Below, in pieces: positions 17,301 to 37,843 of a stretch of DNA of 64,000 nucleotides. The position numbers and the translations under genes are program-made. The number at the start of each line of letters is the position of its first letter. Position 1 is the first letter of the stretch. The DNA is from Macrostomum hystrix. Lineage: Eukaryota > Animalia > Platyhelminthes. Under the pieces are notes generated by a model. The model had not been told where the DNA came from. It was given only the letters and a program-made list of their open reading frames with translations, and did no database searches. The stretch spans positions 1,674,001-1,738,000 of the forward strand of contig CATNEN010000030.1 of the NCBI GenBank assembly GCA_950097015.1, written 5' to 3'.

Positions 17301-20300
17301 GATGCACTCTCATTCAGTGTCTCATTCCTGATGCACTCTCATTCAGTGTCTCATTCCTGATGCACTCTCATTCAGTTTCTCATTCCTGATGCACTCTCAT
17401 TCAGTGTCTCATTCCTGATGCACTCACATTCAGTGTCTCATTCCTGATGCACTCTCATTCAGTTTCTCATTCCTGATGCACTCACATTCAGTGTCTCATT
17501 CCTGATGCACTCACATTTAGTGTCTCATTCCTGATGCACTCACATTCAGTGTCTCATTCCTGATGCACTCATATTCAGTGTCTCATTCCTAATGCTCCCA
17601 TTGACCCGCCGAATTAAACCGCAGGCTGCTCAACTGTTAATATCAGCACAAAGTACTCAATTGATAAGGCTTTTAAGATCTTTCACATCAAAGCGAAGGC
17701 TGGCTGTGTTGTGGCAGAGTCGATCCAGATGAAAGGCTTCTACAATGCGTTGTCAGTGAGTTATGGATTTTGTCTAATGATCTACGCTATTCATTTACAA
17801 AAAATTGCATCTGTAAGACAGCAAGCCACCTGTTAGACTGGAAGCTACCTGTTAGACATGAAGCCACCTGTTAGACATTAAGCCACTTGTTAGACTGGAA
17901 GCCACCTGTTAGACATGAAGCCACCTGTTAGACTGGAAGCCACCTGTTAGACAGCAAGCCACCTGCTAGACATGAAGCCACCTGTTAGACTGGAAGCCAC
18001 CTGTTAGACAGGAAGCTACCTGTTAGACATGTAGCTACCTGTTAGACATTTAGCCACCTGTTAGACATGAAGCCACCTGTTAGACATGAAGCCACCTGTT
18101 AGACATGAAGCCACCTGTTAGACATGAAGCCACCTGTTAGAAATGAAGCCACCTGTTAGACTGGAAGCCACCTGTTAGACATGAAGCCACCTGATAGAAA
18201 TGAAGCCACCTGTTAGACATGAAGCCACCTGTTAGACTGGAAGCCACCGCAGTATTAATCGCAGAATTCCGTGTTTCCAGAGCACATTGCTGAAAGCGAC
18301 GTTCTACCTGAGCTGCAAAAATCAGCGGAACACGTCACTGGAAATTATCAGCCAGCAGATTATTGACTCAGTGCCCTGCGGCGGGACAAAAGTAATTTAC
18401 GGCTCCTGGAATTATCCCTTGTTGTTAAAGTTTCCAGAGGAAACGGATGCTCAGCTTATCAGCAATGTGACCTACAATTTTCCTGGTGAGTGAGAATATC
18501 CAGTCTCTTCAACATCCTTGGTGCGTTGTGCATGAGGCGATCAAAGCAAAATGCCGCGTTTTCCCGTCACGCAGTGTTTCAAGCCCTGTGCCAAGAGTTG
18601 AACAGCAGAAACAATCTGAGCGACAACAGCGTCGGCTACCTCAATCTGCCCCTGTTCATCTCGCCCGGCCGTCTTCCAATCACGCGCAGCCACTATTTGC
18701 AGCTAGCCTGCCAGTTTGAGCTACCATACCGGCCCGGGTTCAGTCTGCTGCTGCGAATCAGCCACAATCTCAATTACGAAGACATCGACTTCTATTGCCA
18801 CTCAAAGCTGTCTTCTAGGGGCATCAGTCCGCACATTGTGCTCACAGCCAAGCAGCGCGATCCGGACAGTTCGGAAGCCTGGATTGAGCAGCAGCTTGAG
18901 ATGTGCCACGGCTACTCGGTGGGCACTTTGAGCACTAAATCTGAGCTGCTAGTAGACGGTTCGGTGACAGTCAGTCTGCTGTCAGTGCAGCAGAGCTGGA
19001 ACGGCCTCAACAACTCGGGCAGTCTGCAAATGTTCAACCAGACTCGAACAAACGACTTGAGCTTCATGATCAGCTACGAGTACGGTGAGAACCTTTGAGC
19101 GTATGGACGGTGAGCGTATGGACAGATGCTCGATACTCGATGCTCAATGCTCGATACTCGATGCTCGATACTCGATGCTCGATACTCGATACTCGATACT
19201 CGATACTCGATGCTCGATGCTCGATGCTCGATACTCAATGCTCGATGCTCAATGCTCGATGCTCGATACTCGATGCTCGATGCTCGATGCTCGATGCTCG
19301 ATACTCGATACTCGATGCTCGATGCTCGATACTCGATACTCGATGCTCAATACTCGATGCTCGATGCTCGATGCTCGATACTCGTTACTCGATACTCGAT
19401 GCTCGATGCTCGATGCTCGATGCTCGATACTCGATACTCGATACTCGATGCTCGATGCTCGATGCTCGATGCTCGATACTCGATACTCGATACTCGATGC
19501 TCGATGCTCAATGCTCGATACTCGATGCTCGATGCTCGATGCTCGATACTCGATACTCGATACTCGATGCTCAATGCTCGATACTCGATGCTCGATACTC
19601 GATGCTCAATGCTCGATGCTCGATACTCGATGCTCGATGCTCGATGCTCGATACTCAATGCTCGATACTCGATGCTCGATACTCGATGCTCGATACTCGA
19701 TACTCGATACTCGATGCTCGATACTCGATGCTCGATACTCGATGCTCGATACTCGATGCTCGATGCTCGATGCTCGATACTCGATACTCGATGCTCGATG
19801 CTCGATACTCGATACTCGATGCTCGATACTCGATGCTCGATGCTCGATGCTCGATACTCGATACTCGATACTCGATGCTCGATGCTCGATGCTCGATGCT
19901 CGATACTCAATGCTCGATACTCGATGCTCGATAATCGATGCTCGATACTCGATGCTCGATACTCGATACTCGATGCTCGATGCTCGATGCTCGATGCTCG
20001 ATACTCAATGCTCGATACTCGATGCTCGATACTCGATGCTCGATACTCGATACTCGATACTCGATACTCGATGCTCGATGCTCGATACTCGATGCTCGAT
20101 ACTCGATGCTCGATACTCGATGCTCAATGCTCGATGCTCGATACTCGATGCTCGATACTCGATGCTCGATACTCGATGCTCGATGCTCGATGCTCGATAC
20201 TCAATGCTCGATACTCGATGCTCGATACTCGATGCTCGATACTCGATACTCGATACTCGATGCTCGATACTCGATGCTCGATACTCGATGCTCGATGCTC

Positions 20301-21961
20301 GATGCTCGATACTCGATACTCGATGCTCGATGCTCGATGCTCGATACTCGATGCTCGATACTCGATGCTCGATGCTCGATGCTCGATACTCGATACTCGA
20401 TGCTCGATGCTCGATGCTCGATACTCAATGCTCGATACTCGATGCTCGATACTCGATGCTCGATACTCGATACTCGATACTCGATGCTCGATGCTCGATG
20501 CTCGATACTCAATGCTCGATAATCGATGCTCGATACTCGATGCTCAATGCTCGACGTTTTAAGCTCGATTCTCGACGTTTCATGCTGGTTACTTGATGCA
20601 CGATTCTCATTAACTCGATTCCTGATATTCAAAGATTTATGCTTGATGCTCGATGCTATATAAATTGCATAACATCTGATGAGCGATACCTTTACACCCG
20701 ATTCGACCTCCAGTTCCAAGCTGCCCCGAGCTGCGGTGCCGCTCGTTGGACCCGGCCCAATCCAACTGTGGCAAGGCCTCTCCGAGTAACCTGCAGCTAA
20801 CGGCTGAGCTGGCGAAAACGCCGACTTCCGATTGCAAATGGAACATCCCGATCAACTCGGAGATGCGAGACGCCATGGCTAGGCAGTCTGATCACTGGCT
20901 GGCTCGAGTCGAACTGTCCAACTTCGCATTCGGCTGCCCGTGCCACGACTGTCGCACGGAGTTGCAGCACATGACGATCGCGCACAAGCCGGCGGATGAT
21001 AGCCCAAGCTCCGACAGGACTGATCATCTGCGGCGACTACCGCACGGAAAGCAAGGTGGTGCACCTGGCTCTCACACCCAGCCAGCCAGACATCCAGATT
21101 TCCTTCTCAGCTCTGGAGACTGGCATCAATGTTAGCGTGACATTCATCGACTGCAGACGGAATTCCAGCCTGCGACAGTGCCAGGTGGCCAGCAGCCAAT
21201 TCTGGGGAATAAAACAGGTTCCGCTATCCGGCAGAACGCCAGGTGAGAGCAGTTGTTTGGCCTGCAGGTTAGGCAACTGTCTAACACCTGGTCTGTAGGT
21301 TGGGCAACTGTCTAACACCTGGTCTGTAGGTTGGGCAACTGTCTAACACCTGGTCTGTAGGTTGGGCAACTGTCTAACACCTGGTCTGTAGGTTGGGCAA
21401 CTGTCTAACACCTGGTCTGTAGGTTGGGCAACTGTCTAACACCTGGTCTGTAGGTTGGGAAACTGTCTAACAGGTGACAGCAGCTGGTCTGTAGGTTGGG
21501 AAACTGTCTAACAGGTGACAACAACTGGTCTGTAGGTTGGGAAACTGTCTAACAGGTGACAGCAGCTGGTCTGTAGGTTGGGAAACTGTCTAACAGGTGA
21601 CAACAGCTGGTCTGTAGGTTGGGAAACTGTCTAACAGGTGACAGCAGCTGGTCTGTAGGTTGGGAAACTGTCTAACAGGTGACAGCAGCTGGTCTGTAGG
21701 TCTAGGAGGCCAGTCTTCTGCACTGAGTACTAAATAAGCCTTCACTAATTTCTAAGCGCATTTTCACATGCTCCAATGCTGTCACTGTCACTGTCAGGTG
21801 GTCTTGTGTTCCTGGCTGTTCTGCTGTCCCTCATGCTCATTGGCTGCCTGTTGTACATCAATCGAGCTATCGTATCGAGTCGTCTTCAAGCCGCTCTTGA
21901 ACATCAGCGACTAACGAGAAACGATGACACACTGCAGCTCACGCTCGACTCTGCTGAATAG
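11314..21961 (+). CDS. Single-pass membrane protein with about seven CUB-like domains (~1146 aa); one +1 frameshift in exon 10
   Basis: Exons 11314-11824, 12701-13174, 13561-13761, 14149-14379, 14728-14959, 16827-17080, 17625-17755, 18281-18485, 18575-19084, 20714-21242, 21798-21961; all GT-AG and phase consistent; total 3442 nt (3n+1). Signal MLRVNSWFWLVLLALL. CUB motifs CNWEV..RVTFDRIELE..CKYDNLTV..LCG..GFMIHF, CSWTL, CTWNIEIPPG, CSWSL, CKWNIP. TM GLVFLAVLLSLMLIGCLLYI. Confidence 0.85.
12115..12570. repeat. 21-bp intronic minisatellite (CUB intron 1)
   Basis: Unit acaccaactggacctattcaa. Confidence 0.93.
13208..13525. repeat. 20-bp intronic minisatellite (CUB intron 2)
   Basis: Unit gagtgtcattcccagtgctc. 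Confidence 0.93.
13790..14118. repeat. 31-33-bp intronic minisatellite (CUB intron 3)
   Basis: Unit gttcctaatccacagcttagattagtgagtca; contains donor-like gtgagt. Confidence 0.92.
14405..14688. repeat. 19/21-bp intronic minisatellite (CUB intron 4)
   Basis: Alternating cactctgaccccatcctgaat and cactgaccccatcctgaat. Confidence 0.92.
15020..16773. repeat. 30-32-bp intronic minisatellite with two sequential unit types (CUB intron 5)
   Basis: ctcagttagtctactagattagcaatcccc up to ~16100, then ctcagtcagtagaatagattagcaatccacac. Confidence 0.95.
17146..17592. repeat. 29-bp intronic minisatellite (CUB intron 6)
   Basis: Unit ctcattcctgatgcactcacattcagtgt. Confidence 0.93.
17815..18248. repeat. 19-bp intronic minisatellite (CUB intron 7)
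   Basis: Unit gccacctgttagacatgaa. Confidence 0.93.
19125..20560. repeat. 7-bp CpG-rich tandem repeat, ~200 copies (CUB intron 9)
   Basis: Units tcgatgc and tcgatac, rarely tcaatgc. Confidence 0.96.
21240..21700. repeat. 31-bp then 41-bp intronic minisatellite derived from the exon 10 donor region (CUB intron 10)
   Basis: ctggtctgtaggttgggcaactgtctaacac, then caggtgacagcagctggtctgtaggttgggaaactgtctaa (6 copies from 21471). Confidence 0.9.
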
Positions 21962-23673: not shown

Positions 23674-26484
23674 ATGCTAGTGCAGATTAGGGCTATTCTC
23701 ATCTGGTTCTCATTTCGTAGTTTAGCTGCTGGACAGGTCATCAACTCGACGCTGCTATGCAAGGCGAACCAGTGCTACAACATCAGCGTACTTGGCAGAG
23801 GCCCATACTTGGCCAGCTACTGCAGCAGTGCGGGAATGCAGTGGTTCGATCAGACATCCTTGGAACTGTTCGCATCAAACTTGCCGGCGATGACAAGGTT
23901 AGACACGCAACTAATGATGTTGAGCACAAAATCCGGCAGCATAGCAACAATCAGTAAAATGTCACATTTATTATTGCAGTGGAATCAATGAGACAACCTA
24001 CTGGACGGGTGTACGCATGGCTCCTCGCAGCAGTCCAGCCGACCGTGTGCTCACTTGGCGCAGCCAGACCAGCCAGCTGTACGTGAGCAGCGCTGCCGTG
24101 AGCAACTACAGCGAGCTGTTCACAAACACAGAGCAGTACCCCGCAGTCGGCATCATCTACAATACAACTGACAGCGGAATAAATTGGAGCTTTCAAAGAA
24201 TCAACAGCACCGGCTGGGCCATTTGCATGTGCACGTGTCCGGCAAACTCAACTTGCTGCTCAACGGCTTCAAACTACTCGTGTGCCAATTCCAGCGACGG
24301 AAATAACTACTGCTTTCGCCTCGGTGAATCCAGGCAGTATTTCTACGAATTGGAAGCTACTTGCAGTGCTGGTGAGACGCTGATTGATCTCAGCCTAAAT
24401 ACTGCTCGGGTAGCATTTGAAAGGTGAGCTCGAAGATTTCAAGATCAAAATCTTGTCCTTGAAAGCAGCAAAATAAATTAGTTGCTCATTTCTCTCACTC
24501 TAGTGTGTTCAACAATTTGAAAATGAGCTGTCAATACCCCTGCCTGGTAGCATTCGAAGAACTCGGCTACAGATTCAACGATAGCGGTGGCGCGAAACTC
24601 AATATGCAAGGATTCACACTGCTCAACGGCTTTCTCAGAGAGAGTTCAACTGAATCTAAATGGGGAATCGTAGTGCAAAAGGATTCTGGTACAAATGCTT
24701 TAAGAGGAATTCGAGAGCAGGATACAAACTCTGGGTTCGCCCGATTCGTGTGCGTACTGCCTATCGCTCCTACTACAGCCGCTCTTACTACAGCTGCTCC
24801 TACTACAGCTGCTCCTACTACAGCCGCTCCTACTACAGCCGCTCCTACTACAGTGGCTCCTACTACAGCCGCTCCTACTACAGCCGCTCCTACTACAGCT
24901 GCTCCTACTACAGCTGCTCCTACTACAGCCGCTCCTACTACAGCTGCTCCTACTACAGCCGCTCCTACTACAGCCGCTCCTACTACAGCTGCTCCTACTA
25001 CAGCCGCTCCTACTACAGTGGCTCCTACTACAGCCGCTCCTACTACAGCCGCTCCTACTACAGCTGCTCCTACTACAGCTGCTCCTACTACAGCCGCTCC
25101 TACTACAGCTGCTCCTACTACAGCCGCTCCTACTACAGCTGCTCCTACTACAGCCGCTCCTACTACAGCTGCTCCTACTACAGCCGCTCCTACTACAGCC
25201 GCTCCTACTACAGCTGCACCTACTACAGCCGCTCCTACTACAGTGGCTCCTACTACAGCCGCTCCTACTACAGCTGCACCTACTACAGCTGCACCTACTA
25301 CAGCCGCTCCTACTACAGCCGCTCCTACTACAGCCGCTCCTACTACAGCTGCTCCTACTACAGCTGCTCCTACTACAGCCGCTCCTACTACAGCTGCTCC
25401 TACTACAGCCGCTCCTACTACAGTGGCTCCTACTACAGCCGCTCCTACTACAGCTGCACCTACTACAGCTGCACCTACTACAGCCGCTCCTACTACAGCC
25501 GCTCCTACTACAGTGGCTCCTACTACAGTGGCTCCTACTACAGCCGCTCCTACTACAGCCGCTCCTACTACAGCCGCTCCTACTACAGTGGCTCCTACTA
25601 CAGCCGCTCCTACTACAGCCGCACCTACTACAGCTGCTCCTACTACAGCCGCTCCTACTACAGCCGCTCCTACTACAGCCGCTCCTACTGCAGCCGCTCC
25701 TACTACAGCTGCACCTACTACAGCTGCTCCTACTACAGCTGCTCCGACTACAGCCGCTCCTACTACAGCCGCTCCTACTACAGCCGCTCCTACTACAGCC
25801 GCACCTACTACAGCTGCTCCTACTACAGCCGCTCCTACTACAGCCGCTCCTACTACAGCCGCTCCTACTGCAGCCGCTCCTACTACAGCTGCACCTACTA
25901 CAGCCGGTCCTACTACAGTGGCTCCTACTACAGCCGCTCCTACTACAGCCGCTCCTACTACAGCCGCTCCTACTACAGCCGGTCCTACTACAGCCGCTCC
26001 TACTACAGCCGGTCCTACTACAGCCGCACCTACTACAGCTGCTCCTACTACAGCCGGTCCTACTACAGCCGCTCCTACTACAGCCGCTCCTACTACAGCC
26101 GCACCTACTACAGCCGCTCCTACTACAGCCGCTCCTACTACAGCCGCTCCTACTACAGCCGGTCCTACTACAGCCGCTCCTACTACAGCCGGTCCTACTA
26201 CAGCCGCACCTACTACAGCCGCTCCTACTACAGCCGCTCCTACTACAGCCGCTCCTACTACAGCCGGTCCTACTACAGCCGCACCTACTACAGCGACACC
26301 TCAGCCAGCCCAGCTAGGCATTGTAACTCCGCTGTCAGAGGAGCAAATTATAGCCATCAACATTCAGAACTATGAATTATCGAAGCAGAAGGCGATTTAT
26401 TATTTGGTCCCTTTGGCGTTTGTAACTATGGCTATGCTAGTTACTTACTATTTCGGCAGACTAGCCTATAGATTAGGTGTCTAA
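23674..26484 (+). CDS. Type I membrane protein: two CTLD-like domains, ~100 x PTTAA mucin stalk, TM (882 aa, paralog A2)
   Basis: Exons 23674-23897, 23980-24423, 24504-26484; total 2649 nt, in frame. Same intron positions and phases as A1, with clearly similar protein (QVINSTLLCKANQCYNISVLGR; YLVPLAFVTMAMLVTYYFGRLAYRLGV). Confidence 0.9.
24768..26295 (+). repeat. 15-bp coding VNTR (PTTAA, variants PTTVA, PTTAG, PTAAA), ~100 units
   Basis: Unit cctactacagccgct with no frame-breaking indel. Confidence 0.97.
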
Positions 26485-28024: not shown

Positions 28025-28558
28025 TATTGCCTCGTAGCCTTCTCTCACTAATTATATTTTGAGATAGAAAGAATTCTTTCAATCATTTTTGTCTATTTTT
28101 ACGTGTGTATATTTGGAACTCTTATTCAGATGCTAATACATGTACAGATGTATTACCGCTGGCTATATGGCCTAAAAATGCTGCATTTAGTGAGAGTTTT
28201 AAAACTTTGCCTTTCTTGACTTGGTAAGACACAAGCGCTTGCATGGCGTCCCTGGCAACGGTTGTAGGGCTAATAGAAAAATGTGAAACAGAATGGCGTT
28301 GCGAGACTATAGGAAACCGAGGATGTTGTTTGTAGATCTGTGGATGGAAATGGCTCATCCTAGTAGTTGGACAATAATGAGTAATGAGTAATGACTAATC
28401 CTTGGAAAATCTGAGTATTTTTAAAGACCGTAGTTGTCAAAAGCTGCCAACAGAATTGGCAAGTAGTATCTCAGATACGCTAAAGTAATCCTCAAGTGTC
28501 TAGCAAACTAACCGACTGTAACAGCTACCGACAGTCGGCAGCGTTAGTGCAGACTTCA

Positions 28559-31500
28559 TCAGTTCGAGTCGGCGCGGCCTGGCTCCTCCGTCCTAAGGTC
28601 GAGCGCAGCCCGGAGCTCTTCCAGACGTCTAAGCAGAGCGACGCCCTCCGGACTGAACGCATCCTCGTCGAGGTGGAGCCCGGAGTAGGCCAGGCGGCCG
28701 CGCAGTTTCCTCAGCGTCACTGATTGGTAATACAAATAGAACAGGTGCACGAAGTTGCGCGTGTTCTGAGCCAGCACGTCTAGCAGGGAGCGGCTCGGGG
28801 GCGCGCGCCCGATGAGACGCCGGCGAAGAGTGCCGAGCAGCCATGCCAGGAGGTTGCGGCCCTCCAGCAGAAGGTTGAGCGGCGCGGGCAGAGGCGAGCG
28901 CTTCGAGAACTCCCGGCTGAGGTCGTAACGCTCGAACAGCCACAAGGACTTGGACTCGGAGTCCACCATGTCTATTGTCTTGCTGAACATGGCCACGATG
29001 ACGTTAAGCAGTAGCACCTGCACTATGACTATGTAGATCACCATGAGCACATAGGGAACCAGCACATTGCCTGGAAAGCCTACGCACTTGTCAGCGACGA
29101 CAGCCTCTGTAGCCAGCTGCGTGGACACATTTCCGCCCGATGGCGCGTCGCATTCCTTTTTGAGATCGTCCAGGCCGTACTCACCTATTGGAGTAAGGTG
29201 CTAAGTAGCCAACTATGTGTCTTTGCCCATCTACCTCAGCTCCCAAAGTCAGTGTCCCTACTCCAGCTCCCTAAGTCAGTGTCCCTACTCCAGCTCCCTA
29301 AGTCAGTGTCCCTACTCCAGCTCCCTAAGTCAGTATCCCTACTCCAGCTCCCTAAATCAGTGTCCCTACTCCAGCTCACTAAGTCTGTGTCCCTTGTTAA
29401 GTTCAGTTGTTCGTTAATCTAGATGCTAATCTGTAAATCAGTTTTTTTCTGGTGAGTCAACTAGATCTGAGCCAGATCTGAATTCAGTGAGCAGAATCAA
29501 GGACTGCTCACCAACAATGGTATAGAATGTCCTGTGAAACATCTCCACCATGATCTCGCTAGTTGGAATCTCATTGATACGGCCCTGGCTGTAGAACTTG
29601 GCGTTTGGCCATAGAAGAGCGTGGAAGGTTGTGCCGAAGCCCACCATGATGACAACGAGGAATGTACAGGAATGGTATGAAGTCCTTCCTGATCATCAGT
29701 GACAGCATCTTCAGCTTGACGCCAACTGATTCCAGCACCACGGAGATGTATAGAATGCGGATCCAGAAGATCAGAGTGGTGATGACGATCAGCACGTAGC
29801 TGACGTCTCCCCAGCTTTTGCCGTGCTCACTCAGCAGGCCGCCCAGCATCAGTAAGTGTTGCGCCTCCATCTGCCTGGCGGCGAATGCCAAGAAGCCGCA
29901 GGCGATCGCCACGAGATCGATGGCGTTCCAGCCGTCGCTGAGATAAACAGCCAGTGTCTCATGTCGACGGGCGGACACAATTTCGCGAAGCTCTTCGACC
30001 AGGACGCCGAGCAGCGTCAGGTAGCAAAACACCTCCGTCGGGCTGGCGTCGCCCTGTAGATTCGAGAACAGAATTGAGGATAGAAAGCATTTTTAGTAGA
30101 AGAAATTGTTATTAGTTGTTTTTATTGTTATTATTAGAGCTTATTAGTTGTAAGGCCACAAAAATCGGCAACACATCACACACTCGTAATTTGGAATTGA
30201 GCATTTCAGCCTCCTTGCTCCTAAATTTGTTGGGAGCTGAGTCCTTGTCTCTATAAAAAAAATCCACCAGCCACTAACCTGGAAGTCGTGCAGAATCATG
30301 TACGACAACAGGCCGATGAACAGAAAACTGGCGACCGCATGTAGGCGAAACTTGACGCACGGCGTGTTGTAGAAGAGCAGCAGCTCGCTGCCGAACTCGT
30401 TCACTCGCTGAAACAGACGGCGCCGGCGCGCCTCTAGGCCGTAGTCGTGTCGTTGACGTCCACGTCCTGCCACCTGGCTGTCCGAAGACAGCAGACGAAG
30501 CGCCTCCGGACAGCTACCCGGATGCTCCGTGGGCCCAGAGTCATTGAGCACAGACTCAAGGAAGACTCGCGCTCCCGGTCCTCGAAAGCGACGCAGCAGA
30601 ACCGGAAGGCAGAGCATCAGTGGTGGCAGGAAGCCCGCTAGGATCACCAGCTCGCGCAGGACAGCGCTCTGGAAGTTGAAGAAGTCGCCGTACCAGTTCT
30701 TCTCCGTTGCTAGCTCAACAATGTCCAGCTTGATGAAAGTTCCCGCGCCGCCGCGCGCTGATAAGTCCAGGATGGTGTAATTTGCATAGTGCGGCAGCGG
30801 CATGCTTACGTAGCTGATTGTGAGGCAATTTCCCGGCGAGTTATCCACCTCTTTCACCTGCTTAATCACCTTGACGGCCATCGCCTCACAGTCTTCGGCG
30901 ATGCGGCCTGCCTTGTCAGCAAAGACATCTTCAATGTCGCGACGTCTCGCCAAGGAGCGTAGTAGAGTGGCAGACAAGATAGCCAGCGGCACCAGGTCGA
31001 ACTCTTCCTGCTGCAGCAGGATGGGAGCCAGGCGGGGCCGGCCGCTCAGAATCGACCACAGCACCAGCGACTGGGCCGGATCTCTCAGTGGTCTCTTGAG
31101 GCACCAGTTGTCACCGCCGCGACGTTCGCCAAAATCAAAAAGCAGCGGTCCTGCTCGCAAACTTCCAGTAGGTTGTCAGCTCAGCCAGCAGCTTGTTCAG
31201 CCTCGCGAACGATATCGACCCGCCGCCATCGCTGCAGCACTGCTTTACGAGCAGCTCGCGGACGCCAGCCTTCTGTTTGCGCAGCGTCTTAGCGTAGAGT
31301 TTATCGATTGCCACCTCCAACTGGCGAGACAGAGCCGTCCACAGGTGCCGGTGCTTAACTAAGCGTCGCAGAAGCGGCAAGTCTTCGGTGAAGAGCACGA
31401 GCTGGCACAGGTGCCAAGCGATGCGACCGAGCAGGCCGCTGGACTCGAGATTGCAGGCTAGTCCGGCTTCGAAGGCATCGATCAGGCCGTCAATAAGCTG

Positions 31501-32387
31501 GTCGGCGTCAACCTTCCGTCGTGAGGCGGCCAGTTCCAGACGAGAGAGCTTCAGTTGCCGCTGTTTCTTCGCCTCCTCCTTTTCTTGAGCCAGCGACTCG
31601 GCTTCATCAATTGCCTCAGATGTTACGGCAGAGCCTCCGATGCCGCCGTCGATAAGCAGTAGCTGACGAACAAACTCGCGTCCTTCAATGGATGTCACCA
31701 TCCCGAGTGTGTCCTGACCGCTGTTGAAGTGGCGAAGCCGTCTCATGAGGTGCCGACCGAGGCAGTCGATGCCGGATGTGTCGGGGCCTTGGAGCAGCAG
31801 GTCGACCGGAGTTTGGCCATGGAAGTCGGCCAGTGAGAAGTCCGCACCGTGGCACAGCAGCTGGCCGAAAAGATCGTGGTTCTCGCAGGAGACAGCGATG
31901 TGCAAGCAGGTGCTGCCGTTGCTGTTGCGGCTGTTAACCAAGGACGTTTTGGCCCGCATTAGCAGGTCGGCAACGCGGCCGCACTCCGTGTAGCAGGCGA
32001 TGTGCAGCGCGTTGTCACCGCTGGCATCGCAGAGCGCAGGATCGGCGCCACATCGAAGCAGCTCTCGCGTCACACCTGCGCCCCGCTCCGACGCCGCCGC
32101 TGCCAGGTGAAGCGGCCGATCTCCGAAGGCATTCTGTTGGTCCGGATCAGGCGCCGAAGTCCAGCAGAAGCTCGGCGCACTCGGTCAAACCGGCTGCGGC
32201 ACACTGCATGCAGAGCCGAATCGCCGTATGCGTTCGGTGCGTCAACAGCACCTGGGCGGACAGCGCCAGCAAGCAGGAGCAGCGCTTGACGCAGTCGATC
32301 CGGTGAATTTTCGCTCACGGCGGCGTGTAACTGGGCCACTGGTGTGGCATTGGTTTCAGTGCTGTCTGCAATGGAGGACTCCGGCAT
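28559..32387 (-). CDS. TRPM-type cation channel with ~5 N-terminal ankyrin repeats (1090 aa after removing four single-base insertions)
   Basis: Exons 32387-30279, 30053-29512, 29184-28559; total 3277 nt, minus 4 = 3273 in frame. ANK motifs DSALH, DRPLHLAA, DNALHIAC, STCLHIAV. MHR4-like LVLWSILSGR..LAILSATLLRSLA..NWYG. Pre-S1 FYNTPCVKF; S2-S3 GWNAIDL; S6/TRP helix LLNVIVAMF..LWLFERYDL..PLPAPLNLL. Could be a pseudogene if the indels are real. Confidence 0.85.
29235..29392. repeat. 27-bp intronic minisatellite (TRP intron 2)
   Basis: Unit cctactccagctccctaagtcagtgtc. Confidence 0.9.
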
Positions 32388-35300
32388 TGCTGAGCTGACA
32401 AGAGATCACGAGATTTTCTGGCTCTCCGGGCCAAACTGGATTTCTTTACTATATTTAACTGGCCGCTTCTGTGAGTACCGCTTCTGACTGGCCGGAGCTG
32501 CTGTTGACTCTGCCACCCGTGGTGCGCTAAGCCAGCTTTAGCTGGTTAGGCTTCAGAATTTAGAGAAATAGCATGAGAACTGACTGAACAGGTGGCGCTG
32601 TGAACCCACGGAACCTGTTTCGCCTATCACACATGCGCACTCAGTTTATCAAGCTGTTTAGGGGCTTACTCAGCCCAGAACTTAGGTGAAAATTATGGAA
32701 AATTGTGTGCGAGTCTGACGCAGTGGTGAATCAGCCACTTCCGTAATAGCCACAATAGTCTAAAAGACAATCAGTTAAGCTACGGTAGAAAGCTTGTCAG
32801 GAATATATGATATGAAACTAACCTACTTTAAAGCCTCAATTCCTATGAGTAGTATCACCAGCGCTTTTCGTTATTCTATAACTTGATGGTTGACAATACA
32901 GGTACCAAAGCTGGAAGGTGTCTTTCTATTAAAATATGTCATTATCTTACTGTAAGTAGAGCACTGAGCATATCTACGGCTTGCAATATCTTGGCCTTCA
33001 TAACTTTGACGCAGCATCCAGAAATAAGGACAAAGCAAGCCCGGAAGCTGCTGACTAAGCGCGTGAATTTTTTCGCTTGACTTGGCACGCTTTCATTTTC
33101 TTTCTTCCTGTATCCCTATTCCGCTGGGCCGCGATGATGACACCAAGCGTAAATCACTGGCCTGACTGGGCAGTCGTCAGTAAGTTTATATATATAGCGA
33201 GGCCTACAGTCATCGCCCGTACGGCAATGGCAAGTCAGAAGTGAGTCATTGCGCAGTACCGCTTGAGTCAGGCTTCTAAATTTAGACATGATCGATCTGG
33301 TCCGCATCCCAACATCTTATCTGACATTATTATAATCAAGGTGTACAGCTAAAGAGCAATTGCCAAAGAGTCAATATCTACATCGAAATAAAAACGTAAG
33401 TCTTATAGGCAAATTGTCTTGCACTCCTCTCACACCTGAGAGTTTTTTATAGAATTCAGCGGAAAAAGGAAATTGGTCTGTGTATTGTGTTCAGTTCGAT
33501 TTGGCTTGCATTTCTGCCCTCAGTACCGCTTTTCTCAGCTATTTTCAATTCCTAATAGATACGCCCGTAGCACGCCGCAGGTGAGGGCATAGGCACTGCG
33601 TGGGCGGACTGACTCGCAAATCTACTTAGCACTAGATTACAATTGCATTTTTGTTGCTAGGCCGGCTGACTTTACAATTTCAACCTTTTATAAGTACCTG
33701 TGTTTCTGCATTTCTCTGAATTTCTGCATTTGTTTAAGAATATTCCGATATTCACCCTAAACGCTGTGTTCGTATTGAGAATTCTACTAAAATTCCAGAT
33801 TCTAAGATTTGTGTATATTTTTACTGTTTACATTGCTTGTCAAATATAGTGCGCAGTTATCTCTGCCAAGTCTGGCCCACAGCAGTTCTGTAAATAATTA
33901 ATTACTCAAATTTATAAAACGGACAATCTTGTTGCACCGACACACACACACTGCGCAATTTAACCCACAGGAAATTCTCCTGTCTTTAGTATTTATTTCG
34001 CATTTCGACAGTGTGATATGAAGAGGTGAGAATAATAAGACTGGCGCAGGGTGACTCAGACTATCGGATAGAAAGACCACCCATTCTAGGCTGCAGTTTA
34101 GCATTTACTATACAATAAATCTTCTCTAAGCAATTCTCGGTGCAAAAGCAGTTCGGGTTAGGTGTGGGGGAAGGCTGAATAAGAGTTAGAACAGCCTAAA
34201 ATGCATGACCAATGGGCACGACGGCGCGTCAGTGGAATGTTCGCGAAAGGTTCCAAAATAGGCATTGGGTGATTCACGGGCGTCACCCGCGACAGCCACC
34301 CCGCCTCCGCAGCCGCCTTCACAGACCGGGGGTTGCACGGGGTTTGACCTCAAGGCTATCGTGTTGCTATTTTTAGCAACAGATTCACCCCTTTCTAATT
34401 CGGGGCTTCCTCCGTTTTCCGCCACGGCCTGACTTAAAGGGACAATTCCCGGGCAAACTAAATCGCTTCCCCTCACCAGATCAGATCCAGTGCAGAGCCA
34501 TATCGATCATGCACCCACTACCTCCCCAGATGAGCAAACCGAGTGACTCACTGGAGTTGGCCACGTTACAAACAAAATGGCCCTGAAGAAATGCGGAAAA
34601 GTCTGGAAATTGGTGGCTCAGTGCAAATCAGTAAAAAGCAAAACGAAATCCATTTACTTCTCTATTTATTGAAGCTTTATTAAAAAACTCATATCAAAAT
34701 ATCGCCAGTAAGGTGCATGGTGCCTAGATAAACAGCGAACTGTACAGAAAGGCTTCTAAAAAAACACTGGTTAAAAGCAGGAGCAACATTAGTTTCGGAT
34801 GGATAAAGTATAAAATGAAAAGCAACAAAAATTATGATTTGCAAGGACAGGCGCTTGAGTAATACTCGTAAAAACAGAGTTGATTCGGATTATGAAAAAT
34901 CATAAAAAACAGTTGAAAACACATAAGTGGCAAATTATGCTAATATGTGCAGTTTCTGCATCACTCTCATGTTTTTAGCGAAATAGATAAAATACAGATC
35001 AGAGTAAGGGCTTGGACAATTCGCAGAAAATCTATTTATTTGCCAGAATTTCTTATTGCATTTTTGTCAGTAAGTAAAAAACACATCTGACCAGCCAAGT
35101 TGTCCTATTTTTATAGCAATTTCTAAGAACAACGTGAACTGTTCTTCATTTTTAATAAAAAACATGATCAGATAAAATCGAAAAATAGCATATCAGCTCT
35201 TTCAATCTGCTCTGGTTAAGATTAAAAGAAAAGTAAAAAAATTAGATGAAAATGCTGTAAAAGCTACACTCTGTGAATCCTAGCCATTTTTTTAGTAAAA

Positions 35301-35730: not shown

Positions 35731-37843
35731 CTACATCCAGCCACAGAAGGCGCTACCGTTGTTTGCCGCGGCCGATTCGCCGATGCGTTCGTCACTCTGA
35801 ACCTTCTTCAGAGAGGCCAGCTGGTCAGGCGTTGGCCAATAGGCGCCACCGTAGCCGGGAGTGATGGGGCTGACAGGAGTGTCGGCTGAGTAACGGCGCT
35901 GCTCAGCCAGGCCGCCAAAGAACAGCGCGCTGTTCCACAGGCGTCTGGGCCGCTCCGGCTCCGGCCAAAGACAGCGCGCGTCCTGCAGCTGCAGCTTCTG
36001 TGGCTGCGGTTGGTTCTGACTAGCCTGGCACTGATCCTCCAATGTCAGGGAGTCGCTGAGGGCGCCAGCTAGGTCATCAACACCGGCTGGTGTTACACTG
36101 ACAGTCGGAGGCAGATCTGTCTTCACCTGGCGCACCTGATGGAAATCGGCCACCAGTCTAAGCGCCTCAGCTGAGCGGGGAAGGCCGGGCTCCAGCCAAA
36201 GGCCCGGACACCGCATAGCAACATACTCGGAGATAAGCTGCTTGGCAAACTGCACCCTTTCGCGATTGCCGCTGATGGTGAAGCAGGTGCGCAGGCCAGG
36301 CTGTTTCTCCTGCTTACGTGGGGTGGCGATATGCGTGTCAGACAGCTGCTGCACCCAGCGAATGGTCTGGCCGGAGGCGCCAACAATCAGGCCGACCTTG
36401 TCCTGCTCCACCCAGAGTCGCTCCTCAACCCGGGTGGGCTCAGTGCGGGTCTGTCGCTCCTGCTGCACGCGGGTGAAATGCTCGCTCATCTGCTGCAGGA
36501 TGTGGATCGCCTGTGGGATTAGATTAAACACTCAATTTGATTTTCTGCTGCGAATTAGTTGATGAATCGAATTACAGTTATTTGATACAAATAGGTGACT
36601 CACCTCAGCAACTTTATCTGGCACTCCGGTGACCTCAAATACTGGAGGCTCATCTCTGGTGGGTGTCTTGACCCACACCTTTCAAGTGCTCACGGATTTG
36701 CTTGATTCGAAGACCTGCAAATGGAGAGTGAAGTATGAAAATGAGTTATTATGACTCAAGAAGCCTAGCTACGAGTAGATACATAAAAATAAAGCATTGT
36801 AGTGTTTAGCAGTTTATAACCCAGGGAGAACTATTAATAAAAACACTGCACCATAACATTTTTTTGTAAATAATTAATTACCTTAAACATAGGTGTATGC
36901 ATAGTAGTTTTGTCTTTTAACTAAGATTTTATACAAATAAGTTAAAAAAATATGTATGCTATTTATTTGCATAATTGTTACCACTGATTCATAAATACAC
37001 ATTTTGTTACAAAGTAGACGTAAAAAATGTATATATTTAAAATAATTGCTACTAAAATTTTGATTACGAATTGGACCTACATTATAATTATAACTAAATA
37101 TCTAACCAAGTTCTATTATAAAACTAAAGTTTTGAATAGTATTTAAACATTATTATCTAAGAAGTATCAGGAGTTGGCTAACTGCAAAGTTAAAAGAAAA
37201 CATAAAAAGAAAAATGTAAATTAAATTAAATATTAAATTTTATTAGGCAACATATCATATATATTTACTGAAATGAAAAAACTTACCATTCTTTCCAACA
37301 ATCTCTGCCACATGATCAGATGATGGAACTTGAATGCGCTCAGTAATGGTAGCATGCTTTTTGTTTTGGGAAACAGAAGCTTGCATCAGCCTTTGGAACA
37401 AATCCCTGGACCTGTTCTCAAAAGTAGCTAGTCGCAGGCGACTGTTTAAATCAGAGCTCATTGACATTTGTTCAATGGCTGATGGCGCACTTGCTGTAGA
37501 CTGTGAAGCAGATGTGTATTCAGAGAAGTGATCAAAGCTTTGAATATTGGCATCAGCAAAAGCTTCGGTGCCTTCTGTTCTTGTGGACAGTCCGCATCCA
37601 AGAATCGGCCGCCATGACATGGTGTCGCCAGTCTCGGACACCCGGCTGCTACTTGACTGCGTTGTTGATCTCTGGTTGGCTATCAAGCTTAGAAGTGACT
37701 CTGGATCCAACTTCTCCATCTTCGGTAAGTTGAGAGTGGGTAGAACGCGAAAAAGGTAGTCCGTTAGAGAAGTTCTCCGTTGTTTGATCCAAAAGACTTT
37801 CGCTCTTGAAGTCACGATGGTACTCCACGTCAACGTTCGACAT
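35731..37843 (-). CDS. MEX3: MEX-3-family tandem-KH RNA-binding protein without RING finger; start uncertain; one +1 frameshift in exon 2
   Basis: Exon 1 ends at 37287 (ITERIQVPSSDHVAEIVGKNG). Exon 2 36714-36604 (LRIKQIREHL/KVWVKTPTRDEPPVFEVTG) is 111 nt where 110 is expected. Exon 3 36510-35731 (AEH-like SEHF, KH2 VGLIVGASGQTIRWVQQLSDTHIATP). Start is either ATG 37843 (needing another +1 correction) or a downstream ATG such as MEKLD. Confidence 0.85.

What the first reader, a model, noticed from the sequence alone, without database searches (positions are those of the whole stretch)
28559..32387. Ankyrin-TRPM chimeric channel
Seen: about five ankyrin repeats, a ~200-aa linker, then an MHR4-like region and a transmembrane/TRP-helix core with TRPM character (WSIL..R..LA, NWYG, FYNTP.VKF, WLFERY..PLPAP). 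No MHR1-3/SLOG region and no Nudix or kinase tail. Established: TRPM channels lack ankyrin repeats, while TRPA/C/N/V have them. Inference: a domain-swapped or unrecognised TRP lineage with possibly novel gating.
Basis: partly seen in the sequence, partly recalled or inferred. Interest (0 to 1): 0.8.

Follow-up and report, generated by a model that had tools for sequence, protein, structure and literature searches.

The report
Flatworm ankyrin-bearing TRPM-like channel (TRPM_MCLZ family)
This is a real, expressed flatworm ion-channel gene that joins ankyrin repeats to a TRPM-type body, but the layout is already known as the TRPM_MCLZ family (the schistosome target of the drug meclonazepam), so it is a new free-living member of a described family.

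Summary
A minus-strand, three-exon gene at 32387-28559 encodes about five ankyrin repeats, a helical region, a TRPM-type MHR4, S1-S6 and a TRP helix. It has no SLOG, Nudix or kinase domain.

The window sequence breaks the frame four times. Contigs of public runs from two studies lack one base at each of those four places. Removing them gives an open 1090-codon frame. One spliced contig covers the ankyrin and channel parts together.

The genome is a Macrostomum flatworm. It holds at least 18 loci of this family, and five are intact, intronless single ORFs with the same layout.

A profile search of 1.84 billion proteins and two trees place the family as sister to the clade holding parasitic-flatworm TRPM_MCLZ. 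That channel is meclonazepam-activated and already published with "N-terminal ankyrin repeats, no SLOG". So the architecture is real but already described.

Fold comparison of a paralogue suggests the "linker" is MHR3-like, so ankyrin repeats replace only MHR1/2.

New here are the expansion in a free-living flatworm and the co-orthology to TRPM_MCLZ. The relation to TRPS could not be tested.

This scan had already flagged paralogues of this family elsewhere in the genome. One follow-up reached the same verdict.

The parts
28559..32387 (-). Whole coding span of the gene: three exons at 32387-30279, 30053-29512 and 29184-28559 (stop included). It encodes 1090 aa once four extra bases are disregarded.
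   Evidence: ORFs and sequence. Segment-wise translation is open in one cumulative frame, 3273 nt. Spliced contig X2 record 5 covers 28400-32427.
31735..32345 (-). Ankyrin-repeat domain: five repeats plus a capping half-repeat.
   Evidence: Pfam Ank_2, Ank, Ank_3, Ank_4 and Ank_5. Repeat coordinates. The same domain in paralogue L018 folds as an ankyrin solenoid, Z about 25.
31153..31686 (-). It is MHR3-like by predicted fold in the closest paralogue.
   Evidence: Model of L018 residues 228-668. Model residues about 46-345 align to residues about 393-747 of TRPM2/3/4/5/7 chains, Z 15-18. hhalign finds no sequence homology for this part.
30678..31085 (-). MHR4 (TRPM homology region 4).
   Evidence: PF25508 at 28.5 bits against a cut-off of 27. 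hhalign of the family profile against canonical TRPMs gives probability 99.0%, E 6.5e-18. PDB phmmer hits TRPM3 and TRPM2.
28976..30374 (-). Pre-S1 and transmembrane core. Coordinates: S1 30344-30282, S2 30035-29976, S3 29933-29871, S4 29804-29736, S5 29681-29606, pore helix 29557-29513, filter GEY...D 29184-29165, S6 29065-28976.
   Evidence: PDB phmmer hits to TRPM4, TRPM2 and TRPM3. Pfam Ion_trans, weak. Coordinates. Conserved positions.
28874..28948 (-). TRP helix and the post-TRP 'PLPAP' segment.
   Evidence: Aligned to the TRPM4 TRP domain at E 6.8e-13. Coordinates.
30054..30278 (-). Intron 1: 225 nt, GT-AG, phase 0. It is absent from the closest paralogue L018.
   Evidence: Joint 30052/30278 in X2 record 5. 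The L018 ORF is continuous across this site.
29185..29511 (-). Intron 2: 327 nt, GT-AG, phase 1. It holds a 27-nt tandem repeat.
   Evidence: Joint 29179/29507 (cut +5) in X2 record 5. Sequence.
32204..32204 (-). Extra base 1 in the window. It breaks the frame inside ankyrin repeat 2.
   Evidence: 'Left out 1' in the X1 and X2 contigs.
32149..32149 (-). Extra base 2 in the window. It breaks the frame inside ankyrin repeat 2.
   Evidence: 'Left out 1' in the X1 and X2 contigs.
31150..31150 (-). Extra base 3 in the window, between the MHR3-like region and MHR4.
   Evidence: 'Left out 1' in the X1 and X2 contigs.
29659..29659 (-). Extra base 4 in the window, inside S5.
   Evidence: 'Left out 1' in X1 and X3, which come from two studies. 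X2 shows the same event placed at 29661.

Best explanation
The gene encodes a subunit of a TRPM-like cation channel of the flatworm TRPM_MCLZ family, in a Macrostomum species.

Domain order: about five N-terminal ankyrin repeats stand in place of the SLOG/MHR1-2 domain. They are followed by an MHR3-like helical domain, MHR4, an S1-S4 voltage-sensor-like domain, the S5-pore-S6 module, a TRP helix and a short helical C-terminus.

By analogy with the recorded schistosome channel and with solved TRPMs, four subunits should form a Ca2+-permeable, non-selective cation channel. Gating would run through the S1-S4/TRP-helix pocket, with the ankyrin/MHR ring as the cytosolic regulatory layer (inferred).

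The gene is intact and transcribed. The four frame breaks in the window are 1-base insertions of the assembly, or of one haplotype.

It is one of at least 18 loci of an expansion specific to Macrostomum. These loci are collectively co-orthologous to the apparently single TRPM_MCLZ gene of parasitic flatworms. That suggests diversified sensory roles (chemical, thermal or osmotic) in the free-living worm (inferred).
For: Gene integrity and transcription:
- At all four frame breaks, contigs of runs X1 and X2 lack one base; X3, from a second study, covers only the 29659 site and lacks the base there too.
- The segments are then open in one frame, 3273 nt.
- X2 record 5 is a 3768-nt contig spliced at two GT-AG introns. 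It spans 28400-32427, so ankyrin and channel parts lie on one molecule.
- The genome has no second near-identical locus that could be a retrocopy.

Architecture:
- Pfam finds Ank, PF25508 and Ion_trans, with no SLOG, Nudix or kinase.
- Five paralogues are intronless single ORFs of 1107-1189 aa with the same layout.
- PDB sequence hits for the core are TRPM channels almost throughout.
- MHR4 homology by hhalign: probability 99.0%, E 6.5e-18.
- The MHR3+MHR4 fold matches solved TRPM chains at Z 15-18. The ankyrin fold matches at Z about 25.

Family assignment:
- A profile of the post-ankyrin part was searched against 1.84 billion proteins. It ranks M. lignano first. Next, among the proteins I could name, come Opisthorchis (639 bits), Dicrocoelium (359) and Schistocephalus (318).
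- These rank above every SLOG-bearing TRPM, which score 289 bits or less.
- P0309 is a Schistosoma cluster that includes S. mansoni. It carries all eight published TRPM_MCLZ residues at the published numbering.
- P0310 is CAH8438365.1, an accession the JBC paper names as an orthologue.
- The trees show an ankyrin/no-SLOG clade at 99. It splits into the Macrostomum family (100) and the TRPM_MCLZ group (99). The window pieces sit with L018 and M. lignano P0123 at 100.
- E868, R943 and the pore Tyr are conserved in the window gene.

Function of the family: Sm.TRPM_MCLZ gave Ca2+ signals and single-channel currents in HEK293 cells (PMC10788528).
Against: - No functional data exist for any Macrostomum member.
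- Only about half of the eight published pocket or pore positions are kept in the window gene (H831 to S, Y864 to V, H946 to Y, Y1117 to F). Meclonazepam sensitivity is therefore not expected, and the natural ligand is unknown.
- Expression evidence is one low-depth contig (depth about 4) in a run whose type is only guessed. There are also two short contigs in another run.
- The assembled haplotype could truly carry the four frameshifts, because contigs drop rare variants.
- The trees use short searches, and long branches are involved.
Confidence: 0.85

Rival explanations
1. This locus is a young pseudogene. The four 1-base insertions are real in the sequenced genome, and only another allele or strain is intact.
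For: The window sequence does carry four frame breaks in 3.3 kb of coding sequence, and none lies in a long homopolymer. Logan contigs drop rare variants, so they cannot exclude a second haplotype.
Against: X1 (depth about 79) and X2 lack the extra base at all four places, and X3, from another study, lacks it at 29659, the only one of the four it covers. There are no other lesions: no in-frame stop, and both splice sites are intact and used. Four indels that all fall in coding sequence with no accompanying stop fit assembly error better than decay.
Confidence: 0.07
2. The ankyrin/MHR3-4 channels are an old, separate TRP family that split off before choanoflagellate and animal TRPMs diverged. 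They would not be a flatworm offshoot of TRPM.
For: With TRPC and NOMPC-like outgroups, the clade is sister to all SLOG-bearing TRPMs, including three choanoflagellate sequences (support 85-90).
Against: Every named member is a flatworm. The stem branch is long (0.98). The other flatworm TRPMs also fall basally, which is typical of long-branch attraction. A tree that holds the clade together with the 11 basal SLOG-bearing rows (four of them verified as flatworm) is not rejected (AU p 0.148). The shared MHR3/MHR4 implies descent from a channel that already had the melastatin region.
Confidence: 0.08
3. The architecture is an artefact: an ankyrin-repeat gene and a channel gene lie side by side and are separate transcripts.
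For: In the window, the ankyrin and channel parts fall in different reading frames.
Against: A single spliced contig spans both parts. Five paralogues and many M. lignano and parasite proteins carry both in one ORF or protein. There is no stop between the parts once the extra bases are set aside.
Confidence: 0.01
4. The core is really of TRPC, TRPN or TRPA type, and the TRPM resemblance is superficial.
For: Foldseek on the whole 904-residue paralogue model ranks Drosophila NOMPC first by E-value.
Against: That hit is driven by the ankyrin repeats. TRPM chains give the highest TM-scores. Every listed match of the post-ankyrin domain model is a TRPM chain. PDB sequence hits are TRPM almost throughout. 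MHR4 is TRPM-specific. TRPC5 and the NOMPC-like protein fall outside the ingroup.
Confidence: 0.01

Closest known systems
TRPM_MCLZ (Schistosoma mansoni Smp_333650 and its orthologues in trematodes, monogeneans and cestodes). It is the meclonazepam-activated TRPM-like channel (PMC10788528, PMC11731825, PMC12861061).
   Same: - N-terminal ankyrin repeats in place of SLOG/MHR1-2, with a TRPM-type MHR4, S1-S6 and TRP helix, and no Nudix or kinase.
- A three-exon gene.
- The S2 Glu, S4 Arg and pore Tyr are conserved, as is the Cys pair after the filter.
- The two groups are sisters in both trees.
   Different: - About 21-25% identity over the full length.
- Shorter: 1090 aa against about 1380 aa.
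- At least 18 loci in Macrostomum, against apparently one gene per parasite.
- The filter motif is 'VGEY..D' instead of 'FEVS..EE'.
- Pocket positions H831, Y864, H946 and Y1117 are replaced in the window gene.
- PF25508 (MHR4) is detectable in the Macrostomum proteins but not in the parasite ones by Pfam.
- Not tested functionally.
Canonical TRPM channels (TRPM1-8, nvTRPM2, the choanoflagellate TRPM2 chanzyme)
   Same: MHR3-like and MHR4 regions, the S1-S6 core, the TRP helix and the pore-loop cysteines. They are the best PDB matches by sequence and by fold.
   Different: There is no SLOG/MHR1-2 domain, no Cys-rich N-terminus, and no Nudix or kinase tail. Five or six canonical ankyrin repeats stand in their place.
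TRPS (TRP soromelastatin, the ced-11 type)
   Same: TRPS is the sister family of TRPM, and its members are often annotated as TRPM-like.
   Different: TRPS is described as having the full melastatin region MHR1-4 plus NUDT9H, with no detectable ankyrin repeats (PMC7306681, PMC13143021). The window gene has neither SLOG nor Nudix. No TRPS sequence could be fetched, so the phylogenetic relation is untested.
Flatworm TRPMs with ankyrin repeats ahead of the SLOG domain (M. lignano PAA85706.1 = P0152; Clonorchis KAG5447154.1 = P0172)
   Same: Flatworm TRPM-type channels that carry N-terminal ankyrin repeats (Pfam Ank_2 at 32.9 bits).
   Different: They keep SLOG, MHR3/4 and the full PF25508 match. 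A tree that joins them exclusively with the no-SLOG clade is rejected (AU p 0.0145).

Membership tests
TRPM_MCLZ / flatworm 'TRPM-like' clade | N-terminal ankyrin repeats | tested here: met
   Pfam Ank families on window piece B. Five repeats plus a cap at 32345-31735.
TRPM_MCLZ / flatworm 'TRPM-like' clade | No MHR1/2 (SLOG) domain | tested here: met
   No LSDAT hit in the window pieces or in the paralogues. A jackhmmer SLOG profile finds none in the clade, while it finds SLOG in most of the longer canonical TRPM hits.
TRPM_MCLZ / flatworm 'TRPM-like' clade | Groups in a tree with experimentally studied TRPM_MCLZ sequences | tested here: met
   P0309 and P0310 were verified as TRPM_MCLZ. The clade containing them is sister to the Macrostomum family, with joint support 99.
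TRPM_MCLZ / flatworm 'TRPM-like' clade | Three-exon gene | tested here: inconclusive
   The window gene has three exons, as published for Smp_333650. Intron positions were not compared. The closest paralogue lacks intron 1 and five paralogues are intronless.
TRPM_MCLZ / flatworm 'TRPM-like' clade | Published S1-S4/TRP pocket and pore residues: H827, H831, Y864, E868, R943, H946, Y1038, Y1117 | tested here: inconclusive
   The window gene reads H, S, V, E, R, Y, Y, F. Four of the eight are identical; E868 and R943 are kept in nearly every family member (R943 is Lys in two paralogues).
TRPM_MCLZ / flatworm 'TRPM-like' clade | Ca2+-permeable cation channel activated by (S)-meclonazepam | not testable with these tools
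   This needs heterologous expression. A Tyr at the S4 position lowers sensitivity in published orthologues.
Canonical TRPM | Complete melastatin region, MHR1/2 (SLOG) + MHR3 + MHR4 | tested here: not met
   MHR4 is present and an MHR3-like fold is present in the paralogue. SLOG is absent.
Canonical TRPM | TRPM-type S1-S6 core and TRP helix | tested here: met
   PDB phmmer hits are TRPM almost throughout, with a best E of 6.8e-13 to TRPM4.
TRPS | SLOG plus a C-terminal NUDT9H domain, with no ankyrin repeats | tested here: not met
   No SLOG and no Nudix; ankyrin repeats are present. The family definition comes from PMC7306681 and PMC13143021.
TRPC / TRPN / TRPA / TRPV (ankyrin-bearing TRPs) | Transmembrane core closest to that family | tested here: not met
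   Apart from two TRPV3 rows at the bottom of the S6-TRP hit list, no such family appears among the PDB sequence hits of the core pieces. Lingula TRPC5 and a NOMPC-like protein fall outside the ingroup.

The most novel reading that the evidence does not exclude
The ankyrin-MHR3/4 channels (the Macrostomum family plus TRPM_MCLZ) may be a separate, ancient TRP family. It would have branched off before the split of choanoflagellate and animal TRPMs and survived only in flatworms. On this reading it is not a fast-evolving flatworm derivative of TRPM, and its large expansion in free-living Macrostomum would be a lineage-specific sensory receptor repertoire.
Probability: 0.08. Interest if true: 0.6.

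Novelty: new member of a known kind. Interest (0 to 1): 0.3.

Why it matters
TRPM_MCLZ is a validated anthelmintic target, but its natural stimulus and physiological role are unknown. The papers read here surveyed only parasitic flatworms.

The family is present, transcribed and expanded to at least 18 loci in a free-living Macrostomum. This genus includes a laboratory model with RNAi and transgenesis, which offers a tractable system for two questions:
- What do these channels sense?
- How did ankyrin repeats come to replace the SLOG domain?

There is also a practical point. This assembly carries 1-base insertions that mimic pseudogenes, so frame breaks elsewhere in it should be checked against reads before being interpreted.

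Tried and rejected
1. **Profile search with the ankyrin part included.** The full-length family profile was swamped by unrelated ankyrin proteins. Only one true homologue appeared. The search was repeated on the post-ankyrin part.

2. **P0147 as the TRPM_MCLZ orthologue.** P0147 (S. rodhaini, 1488 aa) was first taken for the orthologue. The published residues did not fit its numbering, and it groups with SLOG-type flatworm TRPMs.

3. **Single origin of the ankyrin repeats.** The idea was one origin shared with flatworm ANK+SLOG TRPMs, followed by loss of SLOG. An exclusive clade is rejected (AU p 0.0145).

4. **The 19 loose bases at the 5' end of the spliced contig.** They could have been a spliced leader or an upstream exon. 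No match was found in the genome with up to 1 mismatch, so this is unresolved.

5. **Supplementary tables of the two TRPM_MCLZ papers.** They are not held. Orthology was therefore verified through the published residue numbers and one published accession.

6. **hhalign on the 'linker'.** It found no sequence homology between the linker and MHR3. The MHR3 assignment rests on predicted fold only.

7. **Source organisms of four clade members.** These are P0144 (run DRR639838), P0321 (SRR33002330), P0149 and P0160 (UniParc only). Their organisms could not be learned.

8. **No TRPS sequence could be obtained.**

9. **No joined protein was built.** The window gene was analysed piece by piece, by reference, and through intact paralogues.
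Full report
**1. What is in the window**

On the minus strand between 32387 and 28559 lie six overlapping or abutting ORFs. Their translations are as follows.
- Ankyrin repeats: Pfam Ank_2 at E 1.7e-11 and Ank at 1.4e-10.
- A 'TRPM2-like domain': PF25508 at 28.5 bits against a cut-off of 27.
- Two weak Ion_trans matches.

Sequence searches of the three core pieces against all PDB chains return TRPM channels almost exclusively.
- MHR4/S1 piece: TRPM3 and TRPM2, E 7e-7.
- S2-S5 piece: TRPM4, E 1.4e-3.
- S6-TRP piece: TRPM4, E 6.8e-13, with TRPV3 only at the bottom of the list.

No SLOG/LSDAT, Nudix or alpha-kinase domain is found.

**2. Gene structure and integrity**

Reading the sequence shows two GT-AG introns. 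It also shows four places where the reading frame shifts by one base with no intron signal: two inside ankyrin repeat 2, one before MHR4 and one inside S5.

Contigs of four public runs were laid on 28400-32600.
- X1 and X2 lack exactly one base at 32204, 32149 and 31150.
- X1 and X3, which come from two studies, lack one base at 29659. X2 shows the same event placed at 29661.
- X2 record 5 is a 3768-nt contig that skips 225 nt and 327 nt at GT-AG borders. It runs from 28400 to 32427, so it is a spliced transcript covering the ankyrin part and the channel part together.

The genome holds no second near-identical locus that could be a retrocopy. The next best match is 69-77% identical.

With the four bases set aside, the segments are open in one cumulative frame. 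The exons are 32387-30279, 30053-29512 and 29184-28559. They sum to 3273 nt, which is 1090 codons plus the stop.

I translated the segments separately.

I conclude that the gene is intact and transcribed. The breaks are insertions of the assembly or, less likely, of one haplotype.

**3. Organism and paralogues**

Homology searches confirm it: the best hits are Macrostomum lignano proteins at 81-83% identity to a paralogue. The genome is therefore a Macrostomum species close to, but not identical with, M. lignano.

A search of the whole 220-Mb assembly finds at least 18 loci of the family. Five are intronless single ORFs of 1107-1189 aa, and each carries Ank, PF25508 and, in two of them, a clear Ion_trans match. 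These ORFs alone show that the ankyrin repeats and the TRPM-type channel belong to one protein.

The closest paralogue, L018 on contig 38, is 46-68% identical to the window gene and lacks intron 1.

**4. Relatives elsewhere**

A profile of the post-ankyrin part of six paralogues (A2) was scored against 1.84 billion representative proteins. M. lignano proteins come first (1107-781 bits). Proteins from three named sources follow.
- Opisthorchis viverrini: 639 bits.
- Dicrocoelium dendriticum: 359 bits.
- Schistocephalus solidus: 318 bits.
- Some unnamed sequence-read-archive assemblies score 416-469 bits, between Opisthorchis and Dicrocoelium.

In-session ankyrin and SLOG profiles separate two groups.
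- The top group has ankyrin repeats and no SLOG.
- Most other hits, at or below about 289 bits, carry SLOG; many shorter entries show neither domain.

Pfam confirms Ank plus Ion_trans for the parasite proteins.

**5. The architecture is already described**

Both large TRPM/TRPS phylogenies state that TRPM and TRPS carry the full melastatin region and no detectable ankyrin repeats. Neither sampled Platyhelminthes (PMC7306681, PMC13143021).

The anthelmintic literature, however, describes TRPM_MCLZ (Smp_333650).
- It is a schistosome channel activated by meclonazepam and encoded in three exons, with 'multiple ankyrin-like repeats' at the N-terminus (PMC10788528).
- It 'lacks the NH2-terminal MHR1/2 or SLOG domain' (PMC11731825).
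- It has 63 orthologues in trematodes, monogeneans and cestodes, in a clade the authors suggest calling 'TRPM-like' (PMC12861061).

None of these three papers mentions free-living flatworms.

I tied my hits to that channel in three ways.
- P0309 is a cluster of Schistosoma proteins that includes S. mansoni. It has H827, H831, Y864, E868, R943, H946, Y1038 and Y1117 at exactly the published numbers.
- P0310 is CAH8438365.1, an accession the JBC paper names as an orthologue.
- Dicrocoelium P0145 is 58% identical to these over the post-ankyrin part that was searched.

**6. Phylogeny**

Two trees were built: a FastTree of 155 rows, and an IQ-TREE (LG+C20 PMSF, short search) of 58 rows by 634 columns. 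Both were rooted on Lingula TRPC5 and a NOMPC-like protein, and they agree.
- All ankyrin/no-SLOG proteins form one clade (support 99).
- That clade splits into the Macrostomum family (100) and a group (99). The group holds TRPM_MCLZ of Neodermata plus four sequences of unknown source.
- The three window pieces, entered as separate rows, sit with L018 and M. lignano P0123 (100).
- Several own-genome/M. lignano pairs show that the expansion predates the split of the two species.

The whole clade comes out as sister to all SLOG-bearing TRPMs, choanoflagellate ones included. Its stem is long, and the other flatworm TRPMs are also basal.
- A tree holding the clade together with the 11 basal SLOG-bearing rows (four of them verified as flatworm) is not rejected (AU p 0.148).
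- An exclusive union with the ANK+SLOG flatworm TRPMs is rejected (p 0.0145).

The deep position is therefore unresolved. TRPS could not be included.

**7. The 'linker'**

hhalign of the family's post-ankyrin cytosolic region against canonical TRPMs finds only MHR4 (probability 99.0%, E 6.5e-18).

An AlphaFold model of L018 residues 228-668 was made (mean pLDDT 75.6).
- All 50 listed Foldseek matches (ordered by E-value) are TRPM chains.
- VIA-align places model residues about 46-345 on residues about 393-747 of TRPM4, TRPM3, TRPM2, TRPM5 and TRPM7. Z is 15-18, rmsd 3.3-5 Å, with 230-270 residues aligned.

From my knowledge of TRPM structures, that chain range is MHR3 plus MHR4.

The whole-ORF model gives a standard ankyrin solenoid for residues about 5-230, at Z about 25.

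The layout is thus ANK - MHR3-like - MHR4 - S1-S6 - TRP. The ankyrin repeats replace MHR1/2 only. This was shown on the paralogue and is inferred for the window gene, which is 46% identical there.

**8. How it most likely works**

Shown:
- the domain order;
- conservation of the S2 Glu and S4 Arg of the voltage-sensor-like pocket;
- conservation of the pore-helix Tyr;
- a Glu in the filter (GEY..D) and the two pore-loop cysteines.

Inferred from the recorded schistosome channel and from solved TRPMs: a tetrameric, Ca2+-permeable, non-selective cation channel. It would be opened by a ligand or physical cue acting on the S1-S4/TRP pocket, with the ankyrin/MHR ring as the regulatory or docking layer.

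The window gene has Ser, Val, Tyr and Phe at the positions of H831, Y864, H946 and Y1117. A Tyr at the S4 position lowers meclonazepam sensitivity in published orthologues. I therefore do not expect drug sensitivity.

The many paralogues in a free-living worm suggest diversified sensory roles. This is speculation.

**9. Verdict**

It needs two additions (frame breaks and introns) and one correction (MHR3-like, not a linker).
It is a real lineage with swapped N-terminal domains, but not an unrecognised one.
- Novelty: a new, free-living and expanded member set of a known kind.
- This scan had already flagged paralogues elsewhere in this genome, and one follow-up reached the same family assignment. 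I reached it independently from the literature and tested it here.

Noticed in passing
window 32204, 32149, 31150, 29659; also 28499-28526: The assembly differs from run contigs by four 1-base insertions inside this one coding sequence. It also differs by a cluster of small deletions (2, 3 and 11 bases) and two substitutions in the 3' UTR. Frame breaks elsewhere in this genome may likewise be assembly errors rather than pseudogenes.
   Followed up: partly
window 29198-29422 (inside intron 2): A 27-nt tandem repeat of about six to seven copies. Run X1 contigs break here and word depth rises from about 79 to about 185, so the unit is probably repeated elsewhere in the genome.
   Followed up: no
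window 32427 (5' end of spliced contig X2 record 5): Nineteen bases at the 5' end of the transcript contig do not match the window. They have no match in the genome with up to 1 mismatch. They could be an adapter, a chimera, a very short upstream exon junction or a leader.
   Followed up: partly
G000 contig 1, 38-159 kb, and contig 5, 5.96-6.07 Mb: Two tandem arrays of very long open frames (1242-3199 aa) match the S6-TRP piece at 28-29% identity. This is another expanded TRP-like family in this genome, possibly the many-ankyrin TRPM-like genes flagged by other first readers.
   Followed up: no
P0152 (M. lignano PAA85706.1) and P0172 (Clonorchis sinensis KAG5447154.1): Flatworm TRPMs that carry ankyrin repeats in front of an intact SLOG domain (Pfam Ank_2 at 32.9 bits plus LSDAT_euk, PF25508 and Ion_trans). 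I did not find this layout mentioned in the papers read. An exclusive common origin with the no-SLOG clade is rejected (AU p 0.0145).
   Followed up: partly
window 30054-30278 compared with L018: Intron 1 of the window gene is absent from the closest paralogue, and five other paralogues are intronless. Introns have therefore been gained or lost within this young family.
   Followed up: partly
window 19085-20596 (+) and 24505-26484 (+): Long ORFs of low-complexity, repeat-rich sequence lie upstream of the gene. Overlapping ORFs are open in several frames, and the matches are extensin-like and proline-rich. They are probably repeats rather than genes.
   Followed up: no
window 35731-36531 (-): An ORF with a KH RNA-binding domain (PF00013, E 1e-10). 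It is the nearest recognisable neighbour on the 5' side of the channel gene.
   Followed up: no
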